Below are positions 58,347 to 63,054 of a stretch of DNA of 64,000 nucleotides, one piece after another (position 1 is the stretch's first letter; every line of letters begins with the position of its first letter). The stretch is taken from positions 1,190,799 through 1,254,798 of the forward strand of contig NW_005434673.1 in the NCBI RefSeq assembly GCF_000315625.1. The letters run 5' to 3'. A program made the position numbers and the translations under genes. The notes below the pieces were generated by a model that was given only the letters and a program-made list of their open reading frames with translations, had not been told where the DNA came from and did no database searches. Source of the DNA: Guillardia theta CCMP2712. Lineage: Eukaryota > Protista > Cryptophyta.

Positions 58347-59347
58347 TCTTCAAAGGCAGTCGCGACTTGGAAGCACCTGGAAGGAGTTGAGGGAGGAGGT
58401 TGGGGGTCGGAGGGCGGCGCTCACTCCTCTGCCGTTGCCCGCACCATGATGGATCGCTCGACAGCATCCGACGCTGGTTCCTGCTGGATTCGAACAGAAT
58501 TGAGCTCAAGTAGTCAGCCCAGCATCTCCAGTTTACCTCCTCCCCTCCCGCATCGGCATGCGATCCCTGCGGGTTTGAGAGACGCTGCGTGCTGAAATTC
58601 GAACGTTCTCAGGATCAGTTCGGTGAGTGCTAACGGATCTTATCGTCTCTCACATCTCAGCAAGTCCTTTCTTGACTGAAGTCTCTATCCAGTCGAAGTT
58701 GACTTGGCACAGACATGTTCGAGGTCTCACGGGTCTGTTTCGCACCTCCGCTGCATGCCCCACAAGCATCGAGTGAGCCGACGCAAGCATGCTGAGAGAT
58801 CTGTTCGACGCGGTTACCATGAACAATCTCATCGACGAGCAGGTGAATGGTGCATGCGAGGTCAGGCAAAGAGCTGGAAGTTGGAGGGAGGAGGGGAAGA
58901 GCGGGGGAGGAGGGCGACAAGAGGCAAGGATGAGGGTGACGAAGAGGAGTGATGTCTGTCTGTCTGTCTGCCCGTCTTTCTGTCTGTCTGTCTGCCTGTC
59001 TTTCTGTCTGTCTTGTTCTTACATGATCGCATACGTCCGGATCTTCCAAGCTTGCCCCGCCATTTCCGACTCCTCCCCGATTGACCCTCATCCCCGCTCT
59101 TCTCAATCAAAGCACCGACAGATCAAAACAGCCCAGTGAATCAAATCCCGGCCCTCAGTGTCACTGCTGGCAGGGCCCGGCTTCCGAGTGAGCACCCGGC
59201 CCGGGGATCCAACGGTTGCCGTCATTGGAAGGTGCGACGCGGCCTTAGGACTTGCTGAGCCTCATGCCGATGAAGTCTTTACTCGCTGTCAACTACTTGA
59301 AGAGCTATCAAGTTGCTCTGTCTCTACCGTCAAGTCACGCGGAGGAA

Positions 59348-62316
59348 CTACGCTCTGAGCATGTCGATCCTCCTCGCCAGGTTGATGTCTGCAGCTGTCA
59401 CCTGCTCCTCCAGTCATTTCACCGTCTCCTGCTGCTCCCCCTCCCTTCACCGCCCCCCCGCCCCCGGCCCCACTCCTTGGCGCCTGCCCCTCTCCTCGTC
59501 GCTCCTGCCCAACTTCACCTTTAGGTTCGCGAAGGTTCCGAGCTCGACACGCACGTGGCATCCATCTTCAAGACCGTCAGCCACAGCAGACGCGCGGACC
59601 AGCGTCTCACCCTCTTGCTCGCACTTGCTGGCGGAGTTGAGGAGGAGACTAGGATGATGGTTGGCGCGCTCGGAGAGGACAGCCACGTCATCGAGGAAGG
59701 CTGTGGCGTCAAGGAACGTCTTGAACTTGAAAGTCCTATTGCAACGTGAGAAAGTGAAGAGGATATAAGTATGAGGACGCTGATAATAATGAAGATGATC
59801 AGGAGGAGGAGGAGGAGGAGGAGGAGGAGGAGGAGGAGGAGCACCTCTGCAAGACTTCTCTGTTGGTGGAGGAGCAGGTGCCTGAGCTCCAAAGAGGGAC
59901 TGACTTCTTGACGTCCGCCATGCTCACAGGCGCGTACTTGCTGCTCTCAGTTGGCTCCTGCTTGTGCCTCTTCTCAAGGTCGCGCGTCCTTGCGCCTGCA
60001 CGACAGTTAGCATGAGGGGAGGAGGGAGGCTGTTGAGGGGAGAGAACAGCAGGAGGGGCGAGGAAGCGAGGAAGGGTAAGAAAAGGCACGGAAAGGTAGA
60101 TTGAGGATGAGGATTGAAAGGGCAAGGGGAATGGAAAAGAGATGGTAGTTGAGAAAGGATAAAGTAGAGGAGGAGGAGGAGGAGGAGGAGGAGGAGGAGG
60201 ACAGTGGAGCAGGAAGAACAAGAAAGTGGAGGAGGAAGGAGGAAATTACGGGCTTCAGCGAGCGTGACGACGTTGAGCGTCAGAGCAGCCGCACAGGTCG
60301 GGCCAACACCATGGGGTGTCGGCGTGAGGACTCGAGCGACGTCCGCGACGTCTTCCTGCACGTCGGGGAGGAGGGAGGAGAGCGAGGAAGAGAAGGTTGT
60401 GCCAACGTTGATAACGATCGCACCCTTCTTGACCATGTCCTTGGAGATGAGATGAGGAGAACCGGCACACACGAATAGCGTGTCTGCTTGCAAGCAGAGG
60501 CTTCTCAGCTCCTCCTCTGACGTCCTGCTGTGACAGACCGCCACCGTCGCGTCTGCCTGCATCAGAGCAAGAGCAAGAGGAGCGCCAAGTTTGCGGGAGC
60601 GGCCGACCACGACCGAGAGGCCGCGGGTAACGGAGGGCATGGCGCCAGAGCGGAGCAGGAGCTGCATCACTCCCTCTACAGTGCAAGGGAGGACGAGAGC
60701 TGTTGGCAGCGTCCAAGGAACCCGCGGAGGATGGCCGACCACCTCGTCCTTGCCGCTGAGCGAGAGATCGAGGCCAAGGTCGAGAGGAGGCTGGTAGATC
60801 CCCTGAGAGCCCAGGACGACGCCATGCTTGTTGGAGCCAGGGAGAAACCCTTCGGCGTCCACGTCTTTGCTGGCAACGATGACACTTCCAAGCAGCTCGG
60901 CGTCCAGCTGGGGCGGCAGGGGACGCTCGAGGAGGATGGCGTCTACCCCGTCGTCCCTGTTGAGTGACATGAGCGCGTCATGCACGCGCCCGAAGCTCGA
61001 GGACGCCGGGAGCTCGACCCTCCTCGTGTCAATCCCAACGGACTCGCAGAGGGCAGCCTTGTCAAACCAGGACCTCTCCTTTTCCGCGAAGAGCTTCAGA
61101 CGCGTCTGACCGTTGGGGTCCTTCTCCCCCACGTTCACGATGGCAAGGCAGGGCTTCCTTCCCGTCCTCGCTGCGATGGCAGCGGCGCGAGCGCCGGCCT
61201 CTTCCCGCATCATCGAGCTGACCCGCAGCCCGTCTTGGAGCAGAGACACGTCCACGCTCTGCTGCTCCTTCTCCTCTGGCCAGACCTTCTGGTCCAGCGA
61301 CAGCTGGACAGGAACGAAGGAGGAGGCGTATCCTCGAGCAGCCATGGCGTTCGACGCCTCCTGCCACCGATGGGGGTCGATGAGTCCGACCTTCTCCTCT
61401 CGTCCCTGCTCCACCACGTAGCCCAGCACGCGCTTCAGAGTGTCCAGCTGGAACTGGAACGAGTCAACCTCAGTCCCAGTCAGGCATCCCAGCTCCTCCC
61501 GCGCCTCTAGGACAGCCTCCGTCGCCTGCTCGGGCTTCTGCTGGGCCATCCTCCAGCCTTCTCGAGAGGCTCCGAGGAACTCACGGAGCGCTTGTCGCGC
61601 TGGGTCCAGCTGGAGGGTCTTCCTGGAGCAGAAGAGAACCTGAGAGTACCCGAGGGGCAAAAAGGAACGGCCGTTGCTGTCCTTGACCATGTCCTCGAGA
61701 CGGAGGACGTGTGGGGCCTCTCCCTTCAGGATCCTTTGCAGCTCCAGCAGCTCCATGCAGTCGTAGATCTGAATGGCGTCCACCTCCCCTGCCACCAGAG
61801 CCTCGACCTTCTTCTCCCTGCTCACCTCCAGGATCTCGACCTTCCTTGACAGCTGGCTGTCGGCATGAGACACGAGCGTGTGCATGAGCTCCATGCTGTC
61901 GACGTGCATCCCGATCCTCCTGCCCTCCATGTCCTTGAGATTCAGCTTCTTCAGGGAGGCGATGGCAAGAGGAGAAGAGTGAAAGACAGTCCCGAACGCC
62001 ATCGCCTTCACCCCCCTGGCGATCGCCGGGATGAGCACGTTCTGCTCCACTGTTCCCACAGCAATCTCTGCTTCCTTGCCTGCCTCTCTTCCTTTGCTGT
62101 TGTACATGGCCTGCATCCGACACACAAGCTCCGGCTCTTCACCTCCTGCTCCTTCCAGGGAACGAGTCAGGAGGACGCGTCAAGAGAAGGAGGAGCTACC
62201 TGAAGGCTTGAGCACGTTGCAGAGCAGCCCTCTCTGCTCAAAGAGGCCGAGCTTCTTTGCAACATGGATTCCCGCAAACTGAGCGGATGGAAAATAATCC
62301 AAGAACAGGTTGATGC
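59348..62316 (-). CDS. NMT1/THI5-like binding domain + FolD-like methylene-THF dehydrogenase/cyclohydrolase + pterin-4a-carbinolamine dehydratase fusion (first exon not located)
   Basis: INLFLDYFPSAQFAGIHVAKKLGLF (NMT1); KPCLAIVNVG, KDVD, LPCT, VVVGRS, TPTPHGVGP (FolD); LQRTFKFKTFLDATAFLDDVAVLSERANHHP...VTAADINLARRID (PCD); NMT1 and FolD share one exon and the splice phases into PCD are consistent. Confidence 0.85.
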
Positions 62317-63054
62317 TAGTCAATGACTTGTGCATGTTGTATTGTGGTTTCTTTCAGTGAAATGAAAGTGTTTTGATTTCTAGCGCGCTGGTTTCTTCGA
62401 CAGCGCAGGTACCTCAGAGCTTCGTCTTCTCTGTTCGATGAAAGAGAAGCTTTTCTTGCTAGCAACAAAGATTGTTGCGGTCGACGGAGTGTGTTTTGAT
62501 TTTTAAAGCGCTGGTTTCTTCGACAGCGCTGCTTCGAAGCAAATCTGCAAGGAAAGACCATCTTTCGTAAGTATTGAGATAATTCCAAATCAAGCCTTAG
62601 GTACTCAACAAGTCAGCTAGTTATCTTGCAATCCCAAAAATCCTTTCCTTCTCTTCCCCGCCTTGGTTGTCAAACAATCCCGTCCTCCCAGGTATGTCCT
62701 CCATATCCCTTGGAGGACGTTGCTTCCAAACCTCTCACCTCTCCATCCTGATCCATCCTGATCCACCGTCTCCATCCTCTCCATCCTCCTGCTTCTATCC
62801 GTCGCCTCGCTCTCCCTTCCCTTCTCCTCCTCCCGTTCCTCATCTCTCGTGCACTCTGTGGCCTCATTGTGAGAGGGAAACACAGGGGTGGGAACACAGA
62901 GGGGGTAGGGGTGGTCATGGAGAAAAGGGGGGTGAAAATAAGTGTAATCATGGGGTGGGGTAGTAAAGTTATTACTTGGGGACGTCGTAATAATAACTTG
63001 CGAGATCCTGCAAAATAATTTATTCCATTATAAATGAGTTTAGCAGGATTTCTA

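What the first reader, a model, noticed from the sequence alone, without database searches (positions are those of the whole stretch)
59348..62316. Three-domain fusion: NMT1/THI5-type binding protein + divergent FolD + pterin-4a-carbinolamine dehydratase
Seen: the NMT1/THI5-like domain runs without an intron into a FolD fold. Phase-consistent splicing (GCC C|gt...ag|GC GCA; CAG AG|gt...ag|G ACT) then adds a PCD domain that the ORF track misses. Catalytic motifs are shifted: FolD YxxxK reads SWFDK, ILVQLP reads ILLERP, KDVDG reads KDVDA, DVG reads NVG. PCD keeps NHHP but has GTF at the usual TH. Known: NMT1/THI5 folds bind pyrimidine-type ligands, FolD acts on folates and PCD on pterins. Inference: a ligand-binding, oxidising and dehydrating module for pterin/folate or thiamine-pyrimidine salvage or repair, not a standard FolD. 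I do not know this architecture from characterised proteins.
Basis: partly seen in the sequence, partly recalled or inferred. Interest (0 to 1): 0.8.

Follow-up and report, generated by a model that had tools for sequence, protein, structure and literature searches.

The report
Algal queuosine enzyme behind preQ1-like riboswitch
A real three-domain fusion gene of a cryptophyte-type alga turns out to belong to the queuosine (tRNA modification) pathway and carries in its 5' leader two copies of what looks like a bacterial preQ1 riboswitch, which would be the first riboswitch class other than TPP seen in a eukaryote.

Summary
A six-exon minus-strand gene (62335-59348, 804 aa) puts ThiY/THI5-like, FolD-like and PCD-like domains on one spliced mRNA. 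Spliced RNA contigs from two studies and an identical MMETSP transcript show this.

All three domains diverge at catalytic positions, so this is not a standard FolD.

The architecture is not rare. I found 59 non-redundant relatives in eukaryotic algae. In 49 listed clusters the module is fused to QueA, and in six also to QueH. The link is therefore to queuosine, not to folate or thiamine.

The 5' UTR holds two copies of a ~45-nt hairpin with an A-rich tail. It matches the T. tengcongensis preQ1-I riboswitch at every core and ligand-contacting position. The same element, in one to at least four complete tandem copies, precedes orthologues. In related contigs it also precedes a bacterial-type Tgt, a YhhQ queuosine-precursor transporter, two SSS transporters and a penicillin-amidase-like gene.

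Rfam's model does not score the element, and the one exact pattern I scanned for is absent from 185,579 prokaryotic genomes.

Best reading: a riboswitch-controlled nuclear regulon for queuosine-precursor supply, with this protein as an NADP(H)-dependent precursor-converting enzyme. Ligand binding and the reaction are untested.

The parts
62336..62546 (-). 5' UTR (at least 211 nt), no AUG and no splice in it
   Evidence: RNA contigs X1 and X2 reach 62537 and 62546 without a joint upstream of 62199. Sequence read.
62489..62530 (-). preQ1-I-like aptamer copy 1: 7-bp P1 (A)GCGCUG/CAGCGC(U), loop UCGAAGAAAC, tail UUAAAAAUCAAAACAC
   Evidence: CM R1 hit of 60.3 bits, E 5.5e-18, at 62478-62533. MFE hairpin -9.6 kcal/mol. 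Position-by-position match to the Tte aptamer.
62366..62407 (-). preQ1-I-like aptamer copy 2, same stem-loop, tail GCUAGAAAUCAAAACAC; ends about 30 nt before the AUG
   Evidence: CM R1 hit of 51.5 bits, E 4.3e-15, at 62355-62410. The next best hit in the 64-kb window scores 7.5 bits.
62200..62335 (-). CDS exon 1 (start codon 62335-62333; first in-frame start after a stop, no targeting extension)
   Evidence: ORF list, P0001 N-terminus, joint at 62151/62200.
62152..62199 (-). intron 1, 48 nt, GT..AG, inside the NMT1-like domain
   Evidence: 'skips 48' in contigs of X1 and X2. P0001 reads ...KPSGAGGEEP....
60250..62151 (-). CDS exon 2: rest of the ThiY/THI5-like domain (to about 61262) and the FolD-like domain (61252-60250)
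   Evidence: Pfam. AF2 model pLDDT 88.5 and Foldseek FolD matches with TM about 0.85 normalised by target. N-domain model pLDDT 93.5, nearest 4nmy, 3ix1 and Thi5.
59996..60249 (-). intron 2, 254 nt, holds a (CCT)n-type repeat
   Evidence: 'skips 254'. Sequence.
59845..59995 (-). CDS exon 3: linker and start of the PCD-like domain
   Evidence: Contig pieces. P0001.
59736..59844 (-). intron 3, 109 nt, holds a triplet repeat
   Evidence: Contig pieces 59611-59737 and 59852-59994 lie 5 record letters apart. P0001 reads ...EVLQR|TFKF....
59611..59735 (-). CDS exon 4: PCD-like core with ERANHHP and the family-specific Cys768
   Evidence: Pfam PF01329 on this exon alone, 30.3 bits. Family alignment.
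   Evidence: 'skips 45'. P0001 lacks the 15 residues.
59519..59565 (-). CDS exon 5 (DGCHVRVELGTFANLK)
59402..59518 (-). intron 5, 117 nt
   Evidence: 'skips 117 (cut +4)'.
59348..59401 (-). CDS exon 6 and stop codon TAG (59350-59348); 3' UTR runs to at least 59262

Best explanation
The gene encodes a cytosolic three-domain enzyme of the alga's bacterial-type queuosine (Q) pathway. Its mRNA is controlled by two preQ1-I-type riboswitch aptamers in the 5' UTR.

Shown:
- It is one spliced mRNA and one 804-aa protein.
- All three domains fold as ThiY/THI5-like, FolD-like and PCD-like, but each has family-specific changes.
- Relatives in other algae are fused to QueA and QueH.
- The leader element is shared with tgt, yhhQ and transporter genes.
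- The element matches a solved preQ1 aptamer at its core positions.

Inferred mechanism, protein:
- The ThiY-like domain captures a free 7-deazaguanine-type precursor. Such bases share the aminopyrimidine face bound by ThiY, FolD and PCD.
- The FolD-like domain keeps the Lys, the pterin-binding Asp and the NADP site. It moves a hydride to or from the exocyclic carbon at C7, the place where methylene-THF carries its bridging carbon.
- The PCD-like domain keeps the His-His dyad. It adds or removes water at the resulting imine or carbinolamine.
- The product is preQ1, which goes to the YhhQ/Tgt/QueA/QueH route.

The two candidate reactions I favour are preQ0 to preQ1 (a QueF analogue) and cleavage of a salvaged Q-type base (queuine-like) to preQ1.

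Inferred mechanism, RNA: when preQ1 (or preQ0) is plentiful, the tandem pseudoknots fold and hinder the scanning ribosome, lowering synthesis.

Odds:
- Member of the Q pathway: about 0.85.
- The element is a 7-deazaguanine-sensing riboswitch: about 0.7.
- The enzyme yields preQ1: about 0.4.
- Either named reaction: about 0.15-0.2 each.
For: Gene and transcript.

Divergence from FolD, across 40 family members against 40 canonical FolDs:
- Inserted S-W-F-x-K, with Lys kept in 32 of 40.
- Gln replaced by Glu or Met.
- Asp477 kept in 40 of 40.
- DVG changed to NVG.
- GRS..G and HS.T kept.

Divergence from PCD:
- HHP is invariant.
- The third His is replaced.
- A new, nearly invariant Cys is present.

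AF2: pLDDT 88.5 and pTM 0.87 for the whole chain, which suggests fixed packing of the domains.

Link to Q through fusions: module+QueA in P0015, P0018, P0023 (Lotharella) and others. Module+QueA+QueH occurs in Polarella, Pyrodinium and others. In all, 49 and 6 of the 120 listed clusters show these fusions, and many are complete transcripts. Both clades of the family tree share the family-specific invariants.

Link to Q through the leader:
- The element occurs twice here and nowhere else in 64 kb.
- It lies upstream of orthologues in L001-L005, L015, L016, L022, L023, L028, L031 and L032.
- It lies upstream of a Tgt (TIGR00430, 383 bits against a cut-off of 306.75).
- It lies upstream of a queuosine precursor transporter (TIGR00697, above cut-off).
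- It lies upstream of two SSS transporters and a penicillin-amidase-family gene.

Aptamer identity:
- The Tte 33-mer and its residue roles come from PMC7641330.
- G5, U6, G8, G11, A14, C15, C16, A26-A29, C30 and A31 are identical in at least 28 of 29 copies.
- The type II hallmarks listed in PMC11625349 are present: AC before the 3' strand of P1, U after the 5' strand, a G-C floor pair and an A-rich tail.
- The outer P1 pair covaries: CG 17, UG 4, AU 2, GC 2.

Background: algae with mitochondrial bacterial-like TGT, QueA, QueG and YhhQ are reported in PMC12301720.
Against: - No assay exists for the protein or the RNA.
- Rfam's PreQ1 model gives no hit, even on 61 nt at E up to 10.
- P1 is otherwise invariant, so covariation rests on one pair.
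- The P2 pseudoknot is not supported by covariation. The pair homologous to C9-G33 is standard in 15 of 29 copies.
- Many copies come from close relatives, so they are not independent.
- Some contigs (L025, L027) start inside the repeated element, so a chimeric assembly cannot be excluded for them. L018, L021 and L026 carry it internally.
- This gene lies in the stand-alone clade of the family, not the QueA-fused clade. The two clades differ at positions 454/455 (E/Q-R against M-W), so the reaction may differ between them.
- The conserved Cys lies in the hairpin after HHP. From the canonical PCD fold I would expect it to lie away from the His dyad; this is my inference, because no model coordinates were available to check it. 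That weakens a QueF-like thioimide scheme in the PCD site.
- The Tgt in the regulon has DEL and GGSLGK where, as I recall, Z. mobilis Tgt has DEC and GGLAVGE. It may therefore accept queuine.
Confidence: 0.6

Rival explanations
1. A self-contained pterin-recycling module. The PCD-like domain dehydrates a 4a-hydroxy-tetrahydropterin or -folate. The FolD-like domain reduces the quinonoid dihydro form with NAD(P)H. The ThiY-like domain holds the cofactor. The module would serve an aromatic amino acid hydroxylase or feed electrons to QueH.
For: PCD keeps the E-x3-HHP core and scores above the Pfam cut-off. FolD keeps the NADP site and the pterin-binding Asp. The three domains are predicted to pack rigidly. 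From my own knowledge, not verified here: plant-type hydroxylases use a folate cofactor (Pribat et al. 2010).
Against: The third catalytic His of PCD is lost in nearly all members. Nothing links the family to hydroxylases. The fusions are to QueA and QueH, and the shared leader is with tgt and yhhQ. A preQ1-type aptamer would be an odd sensor for a pterin cycle.
Confidence: 0.12
2. An ordinary FolD (methylene-THF dehydrogenase/cyclohydrolase) that has picked up two accessory domains, as the database names say.
For: Both FolD Pfam domains are present. The nearest structures are FolDs, with TM about 0.85. NCBI and JGI name relatives as FolD.
Against: It scores 158.8 bits against equivalog cut-offs of 333-559. 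The Tyr of YxxxK, the Gln and the DVG Asp are systematically replaced across 40 members. There is a 35-45-aa insert between the two FolD lobes. It is co-regulated and fused with Q genes.
Confidence: 0.08
3. Thiamine-pyrimidine (HMP/FAMP) synthesis or salvage through the NMT1/THI5-like domain.
For: The nearest folds are a thiamin-bound SBP (4nmy), ThiY and Thi5.
Against: In the profile alignment, the Thi5 stretch holding Lys62 and His66 aligns to G-x-V-E-Q-N, so neither residue is kept. Identity is 15-17%. No thiamine gene occurs among the fusion partners or the genes sharing the leader.
Confidence: 0.03
4. The leader element is not a riboswitch. It is a lineage-specific repeat or a protein-binding hairpin that happens to resemble a preQ1 aptamer.
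For: There is no Rfam hit. The stem is almost invariant. The copies are tandem, as in a repeat. P2 is unsupported.
Against: It always lies in sense orientation, just upstream of start codons of functionally linked genes (module, Tgt, YhhQ, transporters). It is conserved while the flanks differ. All ligand-contacting and core positions of the Tte aptamer are kept in at least 28 of 29 copies. Only two copies occur in 64 kb.
Confidence: 0.25

Closest known systems
FolD / MTHFD dehydrogenase-cyclohydrolase (PF00763 + PF02882; e.g. 4b4u, 1b0a, 1a4i)
   Same: Two-lobe fold (TM about 0.85 normalised by target), catalytic Lys, pterin-binding Asp of KDVD, the GRS..G and HS.T NADP site, and the PGGVGP-type loop.
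   Different: An inserted S-W-F-x-K replaces YxxxK. Gln is replaced by Glu here and by Met in the QueA-type clade. DVG becomes NVG. There is a 35-45-aa disordered insert between the lobes. It scores below all NCBIfam FolD cut-offs. It sits between two other domains.
Pterin-4a-carbinolamine dehydratase / DCoH (PF01329; e.g. 3jst, 1ru0)
   Same: Same fold. The E-x3-H-H-P motif and the C-terminal Asp are kept.
   Different: The third His is Phe here and F/Y/other in the family. There is a 5-9-residue insert after HHP with a nearly invariant Cys. It scores below the NCBIfam equivalog cut-offs (47.6 against 108).
ThiY / thiamin-binding SBP 4nmy / Thi5 (PF09084 NMT1)
   Same: Type II periplasmic-binding-protein fold, TM 0.65-0.8. 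An E-Q pair in the first lobe is shared with 4nmy.
   Different: It has no signal peptide and is an internal domain of a cytosolic enzyme. The Thi5 Lys62 and His66 are absent. It has its own invariant polar set (Q19, E51, E81-Q82-N83, D130, R157, K160, Q173, Y175, E179, Y214, Q216, W245).
Class I type II preQ1 riboswitch (T. tengcongensis 33-mer; PMC7641330, PMC11625349)
   Same: Small hairpin plus A-rich tail. It has the G-C floor pair, U6, G8, G11, A14, specificity base C15 preceded by A, and CAAAACA (C25-A31). It is associated with queuosine genes.
   Different: It is eukaryotic, nuclear and on a spliced mRNA. P1 is 7 bp rather than 5. L3 is about 5 nt longer. L2 is CAC or AAAC. There is no Shine-Dalgarno platform. 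It occurs as one to at least four complete tandem copies, with a further copy cut off at a contig end in one locus. Rfam RF00522 does not detect it. The exact variant is absent from 185,579 prokaryotic genomes.
QueF (preQ0 reductase) and the bacterial queuine salvage enzymes QueK/QueL (my own knowledge; Yuan et al. 2019 is cited in PMC12301720)
   Same: They fill the same slot in the pathway: making preQ1 for Tgt. Like QueF, the module would use NADPH.
   Different: There is no sequence or fold relation. QueF is a T-fold enzyme and QueL is a radical-SAM enzyme. The reaction of the module is unknown.

Membership tests
FolD (bifunctional methylene-THF dehydrogenase/cyclohydrolase) | Two-domain FolD fold; Pfam PF00763 and PF02882 above gathering score | tested here: met
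   59.3 and 123.7 bits against cut-offs of 32.8 and 27. Foldseek TM about 0.85 to FolD structures.
FolD (bifunctional methylene-THF dehydrogenase/cyclohydrolase) | YxxxK motif: Tyr and catalytic Lys | tested here: not met
   The Lys is kept (K410; 32 of 40 family members). The Tyr is replaced by an inserted S-W-F segment that is absent from 38 of 40 canonical FolDs.
FolD (bifunctional methylene-THF dehydrogenase/cyclohydrolase) | Active-site Gln (E. coli Q98) and pterin-binding Asp (D121) | tested here: inconclusive
   The Gln is Glu454 here (family: E18, M16, Q3; canonical: Q32 of 40). Asp477 is invariant.
FolD (bifunctional methylene-THF dehydrogenase/cyclohydrolase) | NCBIfam FolD equivalog cut-off | tested here: not met
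   Best score 158.8 bits against a cut-off of 333; all 25 models listed are below cut-off.
Pterin-4a-carbinolamine dehydratase | Pfam PF01329 above gathering score; His-His-Pro dyad | tested here: met
   48.9 bits against 26. H756 and H757 are invariant in 59 sequences.
Pterin-4a-carbinolamine dehydratase | Third catalytic His (the 'TH' of DCoH; role recalled from memory) and the equivalog cut-off | tested here: not met
   Phe783 here; F/Y/I/M and others in the family, His in only 4. 47.6 bits against a cut-off of 108.
Thi5/NMT1 HMP-P synthase | PLP-binding Lys62 and substrate His66 (4esw is titled 'Thi5 H66G mutant'; roles recalled from memory) | tested here: not met
   In the profile alignment to 4h6d, the Thi5 'GLK---AMIH' stretch lies against the family 'GsvEQNilip'. 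Neither Lys nor His is kept.
ABC-transporter substrate-binding protein (ThiY-like) | Secreted, stand-alone protein with a signal peptide | tested here: not met
   The first in-frame start lies 5 residues before strand 1 of the domain. The domain is fused to two enzymes.
preQ1-I riboswitch, type II | P1 closed by a G-C pair, U directly after the 5' strand, AC directly before the 3' strand (C is the specificity base), A-rich tail (PMC11625349) | tested here: met
   Columns 10/21 G-C in 29 of 29, column 11 U in 29 of 29, columns 19-20 AC in 28 and 29 of 29, CAAAACA in at least 28 of 29.
preQ1-I riboswitch, type II | H-type pseudoknot helix P2/S2 | tested here: inconclusive
   The G11-C30 equivalent is G-C in 28 of 29 and the G8.A31 equivalent is G.A in 28 of 29. 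The C9-G33 equivalent is a standard pair in only 15 of 29, with no clear covariation.
preQ1-I riboswitch, type II | Score of the Rfam covariance model | tested here: not met
   No PreQ1 hit at gathering score or at E up to 10, even on a 61-nt stretch.
preQ1-I riboswitch, type II | Placed in leaders of queuosine synthesis or transport genes | tested here: met
   It lies upstream of Tgt (L025), a YhhQ-type transporter (L018) and the QueA-linked module (12 loci).
preQ1-I riboswitch, type II | Selective, saturable binding of preQ1 | not testable with these tools
   Needs in-line probing, ITC or a reporter assay.
Queuosine pathway component | Fusion or co-regulation with known Q enzymes in several lineages | tested here: met
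   49 clusters with QueA and 6 with QueA+QueH. Named sources are Lotharella, Polarella, Pyrodinium and a Bacillariaceae MAG. Shared leader element.

The most novel reading that the evidence does not exclude
Cryptophyte-type algae use tandem preQ1-I-class riboswitch aptamers in the 5' UTRs of nuclear, spliced mRNAs. These control a regulon for queuosine-precursor uptake and conversion: SSS transporters, a penicillin-amidase-like hydrolase, this ThiY-FolD-PCD enzyme, YhhQ and a bacterial-type Tgt. This would be the first riboswitch class other than TPP working in eukaryotes. It would act by blocking ribosome scanning rather than through splicing. It would also mark the three-domain protein as a new enzyme that supplies preQ1 in algae.
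Probability: 0.55. Interest if true: 0.95.

Novelty: new variant of a known kind. Interest (0 to 1): 0.9.

Why it matters
Three points.

(1) Kavita and Breaker (2022, PMC10043782) ask 'Where are the eukaryotic riboswitches?'. [quoted passage not shown] A 45-nt element with every core position of a solved preQ1 aptamer, sitting in leaders of tgt, yhhQ and QueA-linked genes of an alga, makes that question directly testable. A synthetic RNA and a few ligands would do it.

(2) Eukaryotes are held to depend on salvaged queuine. Bacterial-type TGT, QueA and QueG in algae were reported only in 2025 (PMC12301720), and the source of preQ1 was left open. A conserved three-domain enzyme fused to QueA and QueH in dinoflagellates, diatoms and chlorarachniophytes is the obvious candidate for that missing step.

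(3) In practice, dozens of database entries named 'tetrahydrofolate dehydrogenase/cyclohydrolase' or '4a-hydroxytetrahydrobiopterin dehydratase' are probably misnamed.

Tried and rejected
- Idea: FolD+PCD serves a folate-dependent phenylalanine hydroxylase. No link was found. A paper search for Guillardia with phenylalanine hydroxylase was empty. I dropped the idea once the QueA and QueH fusions appeared.
- 'Stand-alone bacterial' N-domain proteins (P0004, P0005). These turned out to be pieces of eukaryotic genes split by a prokaryotic gene caller.
- Search for prokaryotic relatives of the N domain. The A4 alignment was too diverse for the tool. A1 patterns gave 64 pattern matches, none confirmed.
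- QueA or QueH in the window itself: none.
- The profile word search with A2 added little.
- The ESM Atlas feature search gave only generic NMT1 clusters at 0.76.
- Rfam on the leader, four ways: no PreQ1 hit.
- P2 registers tested on the alignment: no convincing covariation.
- The element was not found upstream of QueA-type-clade transcripts (L007-L010), the TARA picoeukaryote gene (L011-L013), or L006 and L014. It seems confined to the cryptophyte-like clade.
- The scan's notes by sequence and by the word 'riboswitch' gave nothing.
- Literature: no paper was found that describes the tri-domain protein, its QueA fusion or a eukaryotic preQ1 riboswitch. The library does not hold most subscription journals.
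Full report
**1. The gene**

The region holds a 733-aa open frame on the minus strand (59924-62125), with a 51-aa frame just upstream in the same phase. Pfam finds NMT1 (PF09084), THF_DHG_CYH (PF00763) and THF_DHG_CYH_C (PF02882) in it, all above cut-off.

A word search of the protein collection returned P0001, an 804-aa product of an MMETSP transcript. It is 100% identical to the window ORF and carries PF01329 (Pterin_4a) as a fourth Pfam family. Two more proteins have the same four families: P0002 (49% identity) and P0003 from the cryptophyte Baffinella frigidus.

Laying public runs on 59100-62600 gave one spliced contig in each of two runs from different studies (2699 and 2713 nt). Each spans 59262-62546 with GT..AG introns of 48, 254, 45 and 117 nt removed. 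The contig pieces also imply a fifth intron of 109 nt. An older DNA run is unspliced.

The six CDS exons add up to 2415 nt, which is 804 codons plus TAG at 59350-59348.

The ATG at 62335 is the first in-frame start after a stop. It lies five residues before the first strand of the domain, so there is no targeting peptide.

The organism is a eukaryote with spliceosomal introns, close to cryptophytes. I did not establish the species.

**2. The three domains**

*FolD-like domain.* Alignments to solved FolDs and a comparison of 40 family members with 40 canonical FolDs show the following.
- The catalytic Lys is kept.
- The Asp of KDVD is kept in 40 of 40.
- The NADP site (GRS..G, HS.T) is kept.
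- An inserted S-W-F-x-K replaces YxxxK.
- Glu or Met replaces the active-site Gln.
- NVG replaces DVG.

The best NCBIfam FolD score is 158.8 bits against a cut-off of 333.

*PCD-like domain.* It keeps E-x3-H-H-P. The third His is lost: Phe here, and F/Y/other in relatives. A 5-9-residue insert with a nearly invariant Cys has been gained.

*N-terminal domain.* It is a remote member of the ThiY/Thi5 group. The profile search gives E = 2.7e-13 to the thiamin-bound SBP 4nmy. An AF2 model (pLDDT 93.5) is nearest to 4nmy, ThiY 3ix1 and Thi5, with TM 0.65-0.8 at 15-17% identity. The Thi5 Lys62/His66 stretch is not kept.

*Whole chain.* It models with pLDDT 88.5 and pTM 0.87. The only disordered part is a 35-45-residue insert between the FolD lobes. 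None of the three domains passes as an ordinary member of its family.

**3. Distribution and fusion partners**

An exhaustive HMMER search with P0001 found many multi-domain relatives at 30-55% identity. Mapping the domains showed the same order, N - FolD - PCD, in most of them.

The long relatives carry a C-terminal QueA domain (PF02547, E down to 1e-90). One also carries QueH (PF02677).

A search seeded on the QueA part, restricted to long proteins, listed 49 clusters with module+QueA and six with module+QueA+QueH. Named sources include Polarella glacialis, Pyrodinium bahamense, a Bacillariaceae MAG and several complete MMETSP ORFs. QueA-QueH fusions without the module were also listed, in Diacronema and Pelagomonas.

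Other named sources:
- Lotharella globosa has module+QueA.
- Pelagophyceae sp. CCMP2097 and Tetraselmis striata have the stand-alone module.

Gene neighbours (Pex2/12, DENN, WD40) and introns show that these are eukaryotic loci. No prokaryotic relative of the N domain was found.

A quick ML tree of 59 non-redundant modules separates two clades with SH-aLRT 100:
- a stand-alone clade of 13, which holds this gene, Baffinella, Tetraselmis and the pelagophyte;
- a QueA-type clade of 46, of which 41 carry QueA.

Both clades share the family-specific invariants in all three domains. They differ at positions 454/455. Many QueA-type members start with Arg/Ser-rich leaders that look like mitochondrial presequences; this is my reading by eye, not a prediction tool. 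That agrees with the mitochondrial bacterial-type Q route proposed for Chloropicon and red algae (PMC12301720).

A first-stage note reports a YhhQ-QueA fusion elsewhere in this genome. I could not check it.

**4. The leader element**

While reading the 5' UTR I saw two copies of the same hairpin with an A-rich tail: GCGCUG-UCGAAGAAAC-CAGCGC followed by ...AUCAAAACAC.

The 5' regions of orthologues carry the same element in one to at least four complete tandem copies, with a further copy cut off at a contig end in one locus. The sequence varies a little and the flanks differ. A truncated copy opens the P0002 transcript contig.

A pattern scan of JGI metagenomes and metatranscriptomes gave 16 more loci. 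In the orientation of the element, the next gene downstream is one of these:
- the tri-domain module (L022, L023, L028, L031, L032);
- a Tgt (L025). The first AUG lies 104 nt after the element. Pfam TGT E = 9e-112; NCBIfam TIGR00430 383 bits against a cut-off of 306.75;
- a YhhQ-type queuosine precursor transporter (L018). The first AUG lies 57 nt after the element. It scores above the TIGR00697 cut-off and has an Arg/Ala-rich leader;
- a sodium:solute-symporter-type gene (L021 and L026);
- a penicillin-amidase-family gene (L027).

In L018, L021 and L026 the element is internal to the contig. L025 and L027 begin inside the repeat, so a mis-join there is possible, though L025 looks like a transcript.

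A covariance model built from 29 distinct copies finds exactly two hits in the 64-kb window (60.3 and 51.5 bits). The next best scores 7.5 bits. It finds nothing upstream of QueA-type-clade transcripts or the TARA gene. The exact pattern is absent from 185,579 prokaryotic species genomes.

**5. Is it a preQ1 aptamer?**

The T. tengcongensis 33-mer is printed in PMC7641330, together with the roles of its residues:
- C15 is the specificity base;
- U6 and A29 contact the ligand;
- S2 is made of G11-C30, G8.A31, A10.A32 and C9-G33;
- the A-rich L3 lies in the minor groove of S1.

The review PMC11625349 gives the type II hallmarks: AC before the 3' strand of P1, U6, a G5-C floor pair whose O6 meets the aminomethyl group, and an A-rich tail.

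I mapped the 29 copies onto the Tte sequence. G5, U6, C7, G8, G11, C15, C16 and A26-A28 are identical in 29 of 29. A14, C25, A29, C30 and A31 are identical in 28 of 29.

The differences are a 7-bp P1 instead of 5 bp, an L3 about five nucleotides longer, and a shorter or different L2. The longer L3 is what a longer P1 would need.

The outermost P1 pair covaries: CG 17, UG 4, AU 2, GC 2, with 4 unpaired. The other six pairs never vary, so they say nothing for or against the structure. P2 is not settled. On its own, each copy folds as the P1 hairpin with a free tail.

Against membership: Rfam's model does not report it in any of four searches.

I therefore call it a preQ1-I-like aptamer, probable but unproven.

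**6. How it most likely works**

*Shown.* One mRNA, one protein, three divergent domains. Relatives are fused to the last two Q enzymes. A leader element is shared with tgt, yhhQ and transporter genes. The element matches a solved preQ1 aptamer at its functional positions.

*Inferred, regulon.* It supplies preQ1 to the bacterial-type Tgt/QueA/QueH route. In bacteria, preQ1 riboswitches control preQ1 synthesis and import genes, so the module most likely makes or liberates preQ1.

*Inferred, enzyme.* FolD chemistry is hydride transfer at a carbon attached to N5 of a 2-amino-4-oxo-pteridine, followed by hydrolysis of the iminium. The C7 side-chain carbon of 7-deazaguanines sits at the equivalent place. 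An NADP(H)-dependent step at C7-CH=N/CH2-N would therefore fit, either as reduction of preQ0 intermediates or as oxidative cleavage of a queuine-type secondary amine. The PCD-like domain would handle the carbinolamine/imine water step, and the ThiY-like domain would capture the base. Which reaction it is remains open.

*Inferred, switch.* There is no AUG and no intron in the 5' UTR, and the aptamers come in tandem. Ligand-stabilised pseudoknots that impede scanning are the simplest expression platform.

**7. Verdict**

It is wrong about the pathway.
- The protein family is a widespread, unstudied algal enzyme tied to queuosine.
- The leader element is a strong candidate for a second riboswitch class in eukaryotes.

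The two claims are independent enough that either could stand alone. Both need bench tests that are simple to set up.

Noticed in passing
window 62152-62199 and 59566-59610: This genome uses very short spliceosomal introns (48 and 45 nt, GT..AG). They are in phase and easy to read through, so ORF-based reading of other genes in this genome will make the same mistake.
   Followed up: yes
window 62351-62368 (minus): Directly after aptamer copy 2 lies a perfect 6-bp hairpin, CUUUCA-UUUCAC-UGAAAG. Its 5' strand overlaps the nucleotides that would form the 3' strand of P2, and it ends about 15 nt before the AUG. It could be a mutually exclusive structure, that is, an expression platform.
   Followed up: no
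window 59783-59851 and 60158-60209: Triplet repeats (CCT/CTC runs on the sense strand) fill much of introns 2 and 3. The read tool skipped them as repeats.
   Followed up: no
L027:574-2787 (+), L021, L026: A penicillin-amidase-family (Ntn hydrolase) gene and two sodium:solute-symporter-type genes carry the same leader element as the module, tgt and yhhQ. They are candidates for uptake and first processing of a salvaged queuosine precursor.
   Followed up: partly
L025:169-1560 (+): The Tgt behind the element passes the bacterial Tgt equivalog cut-off. It has an N-terminal extension of about 95 residues. It reads PLDELPPY and GGSLGKDKDE where, as I recall, Z. mobilis Tgt has FDECTPY and GGLAVGE, so its base specificity (preQ1 or queuine) is open.
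   Followed up: partly
P0233 (Diacronema lutheri), P0238 (Pelagomonas calceolata) and about 25 further clusters: QueA-QueH fusion proteins without the module are common in eukaryotic plankton. Other QueA partners were listed too (PF00275 EPSP-synthase-type, PF00892 EamA).
   Followed up: no
P0003 (Baffinella frigidus, NCBI): The deposited gene model repeats a stretch (VTLLPPPGAGGDEPEQ... twice) and lacks the SWFxK segment and part of the PGGVGP loop. It looks like an annotation or assembly error rather than biology.
   Followed up: no
L023:1-286, L028:1-239, L032, L001:3501-3957: The number of tandem aptamer copies varies from 1 to at least 4 complete copies between orthologous leaders; L023 has a further copy cut off at the contig start. 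Spacing is 66 to 220 nt. Contigs often break inside the array.
   Followed up: partly
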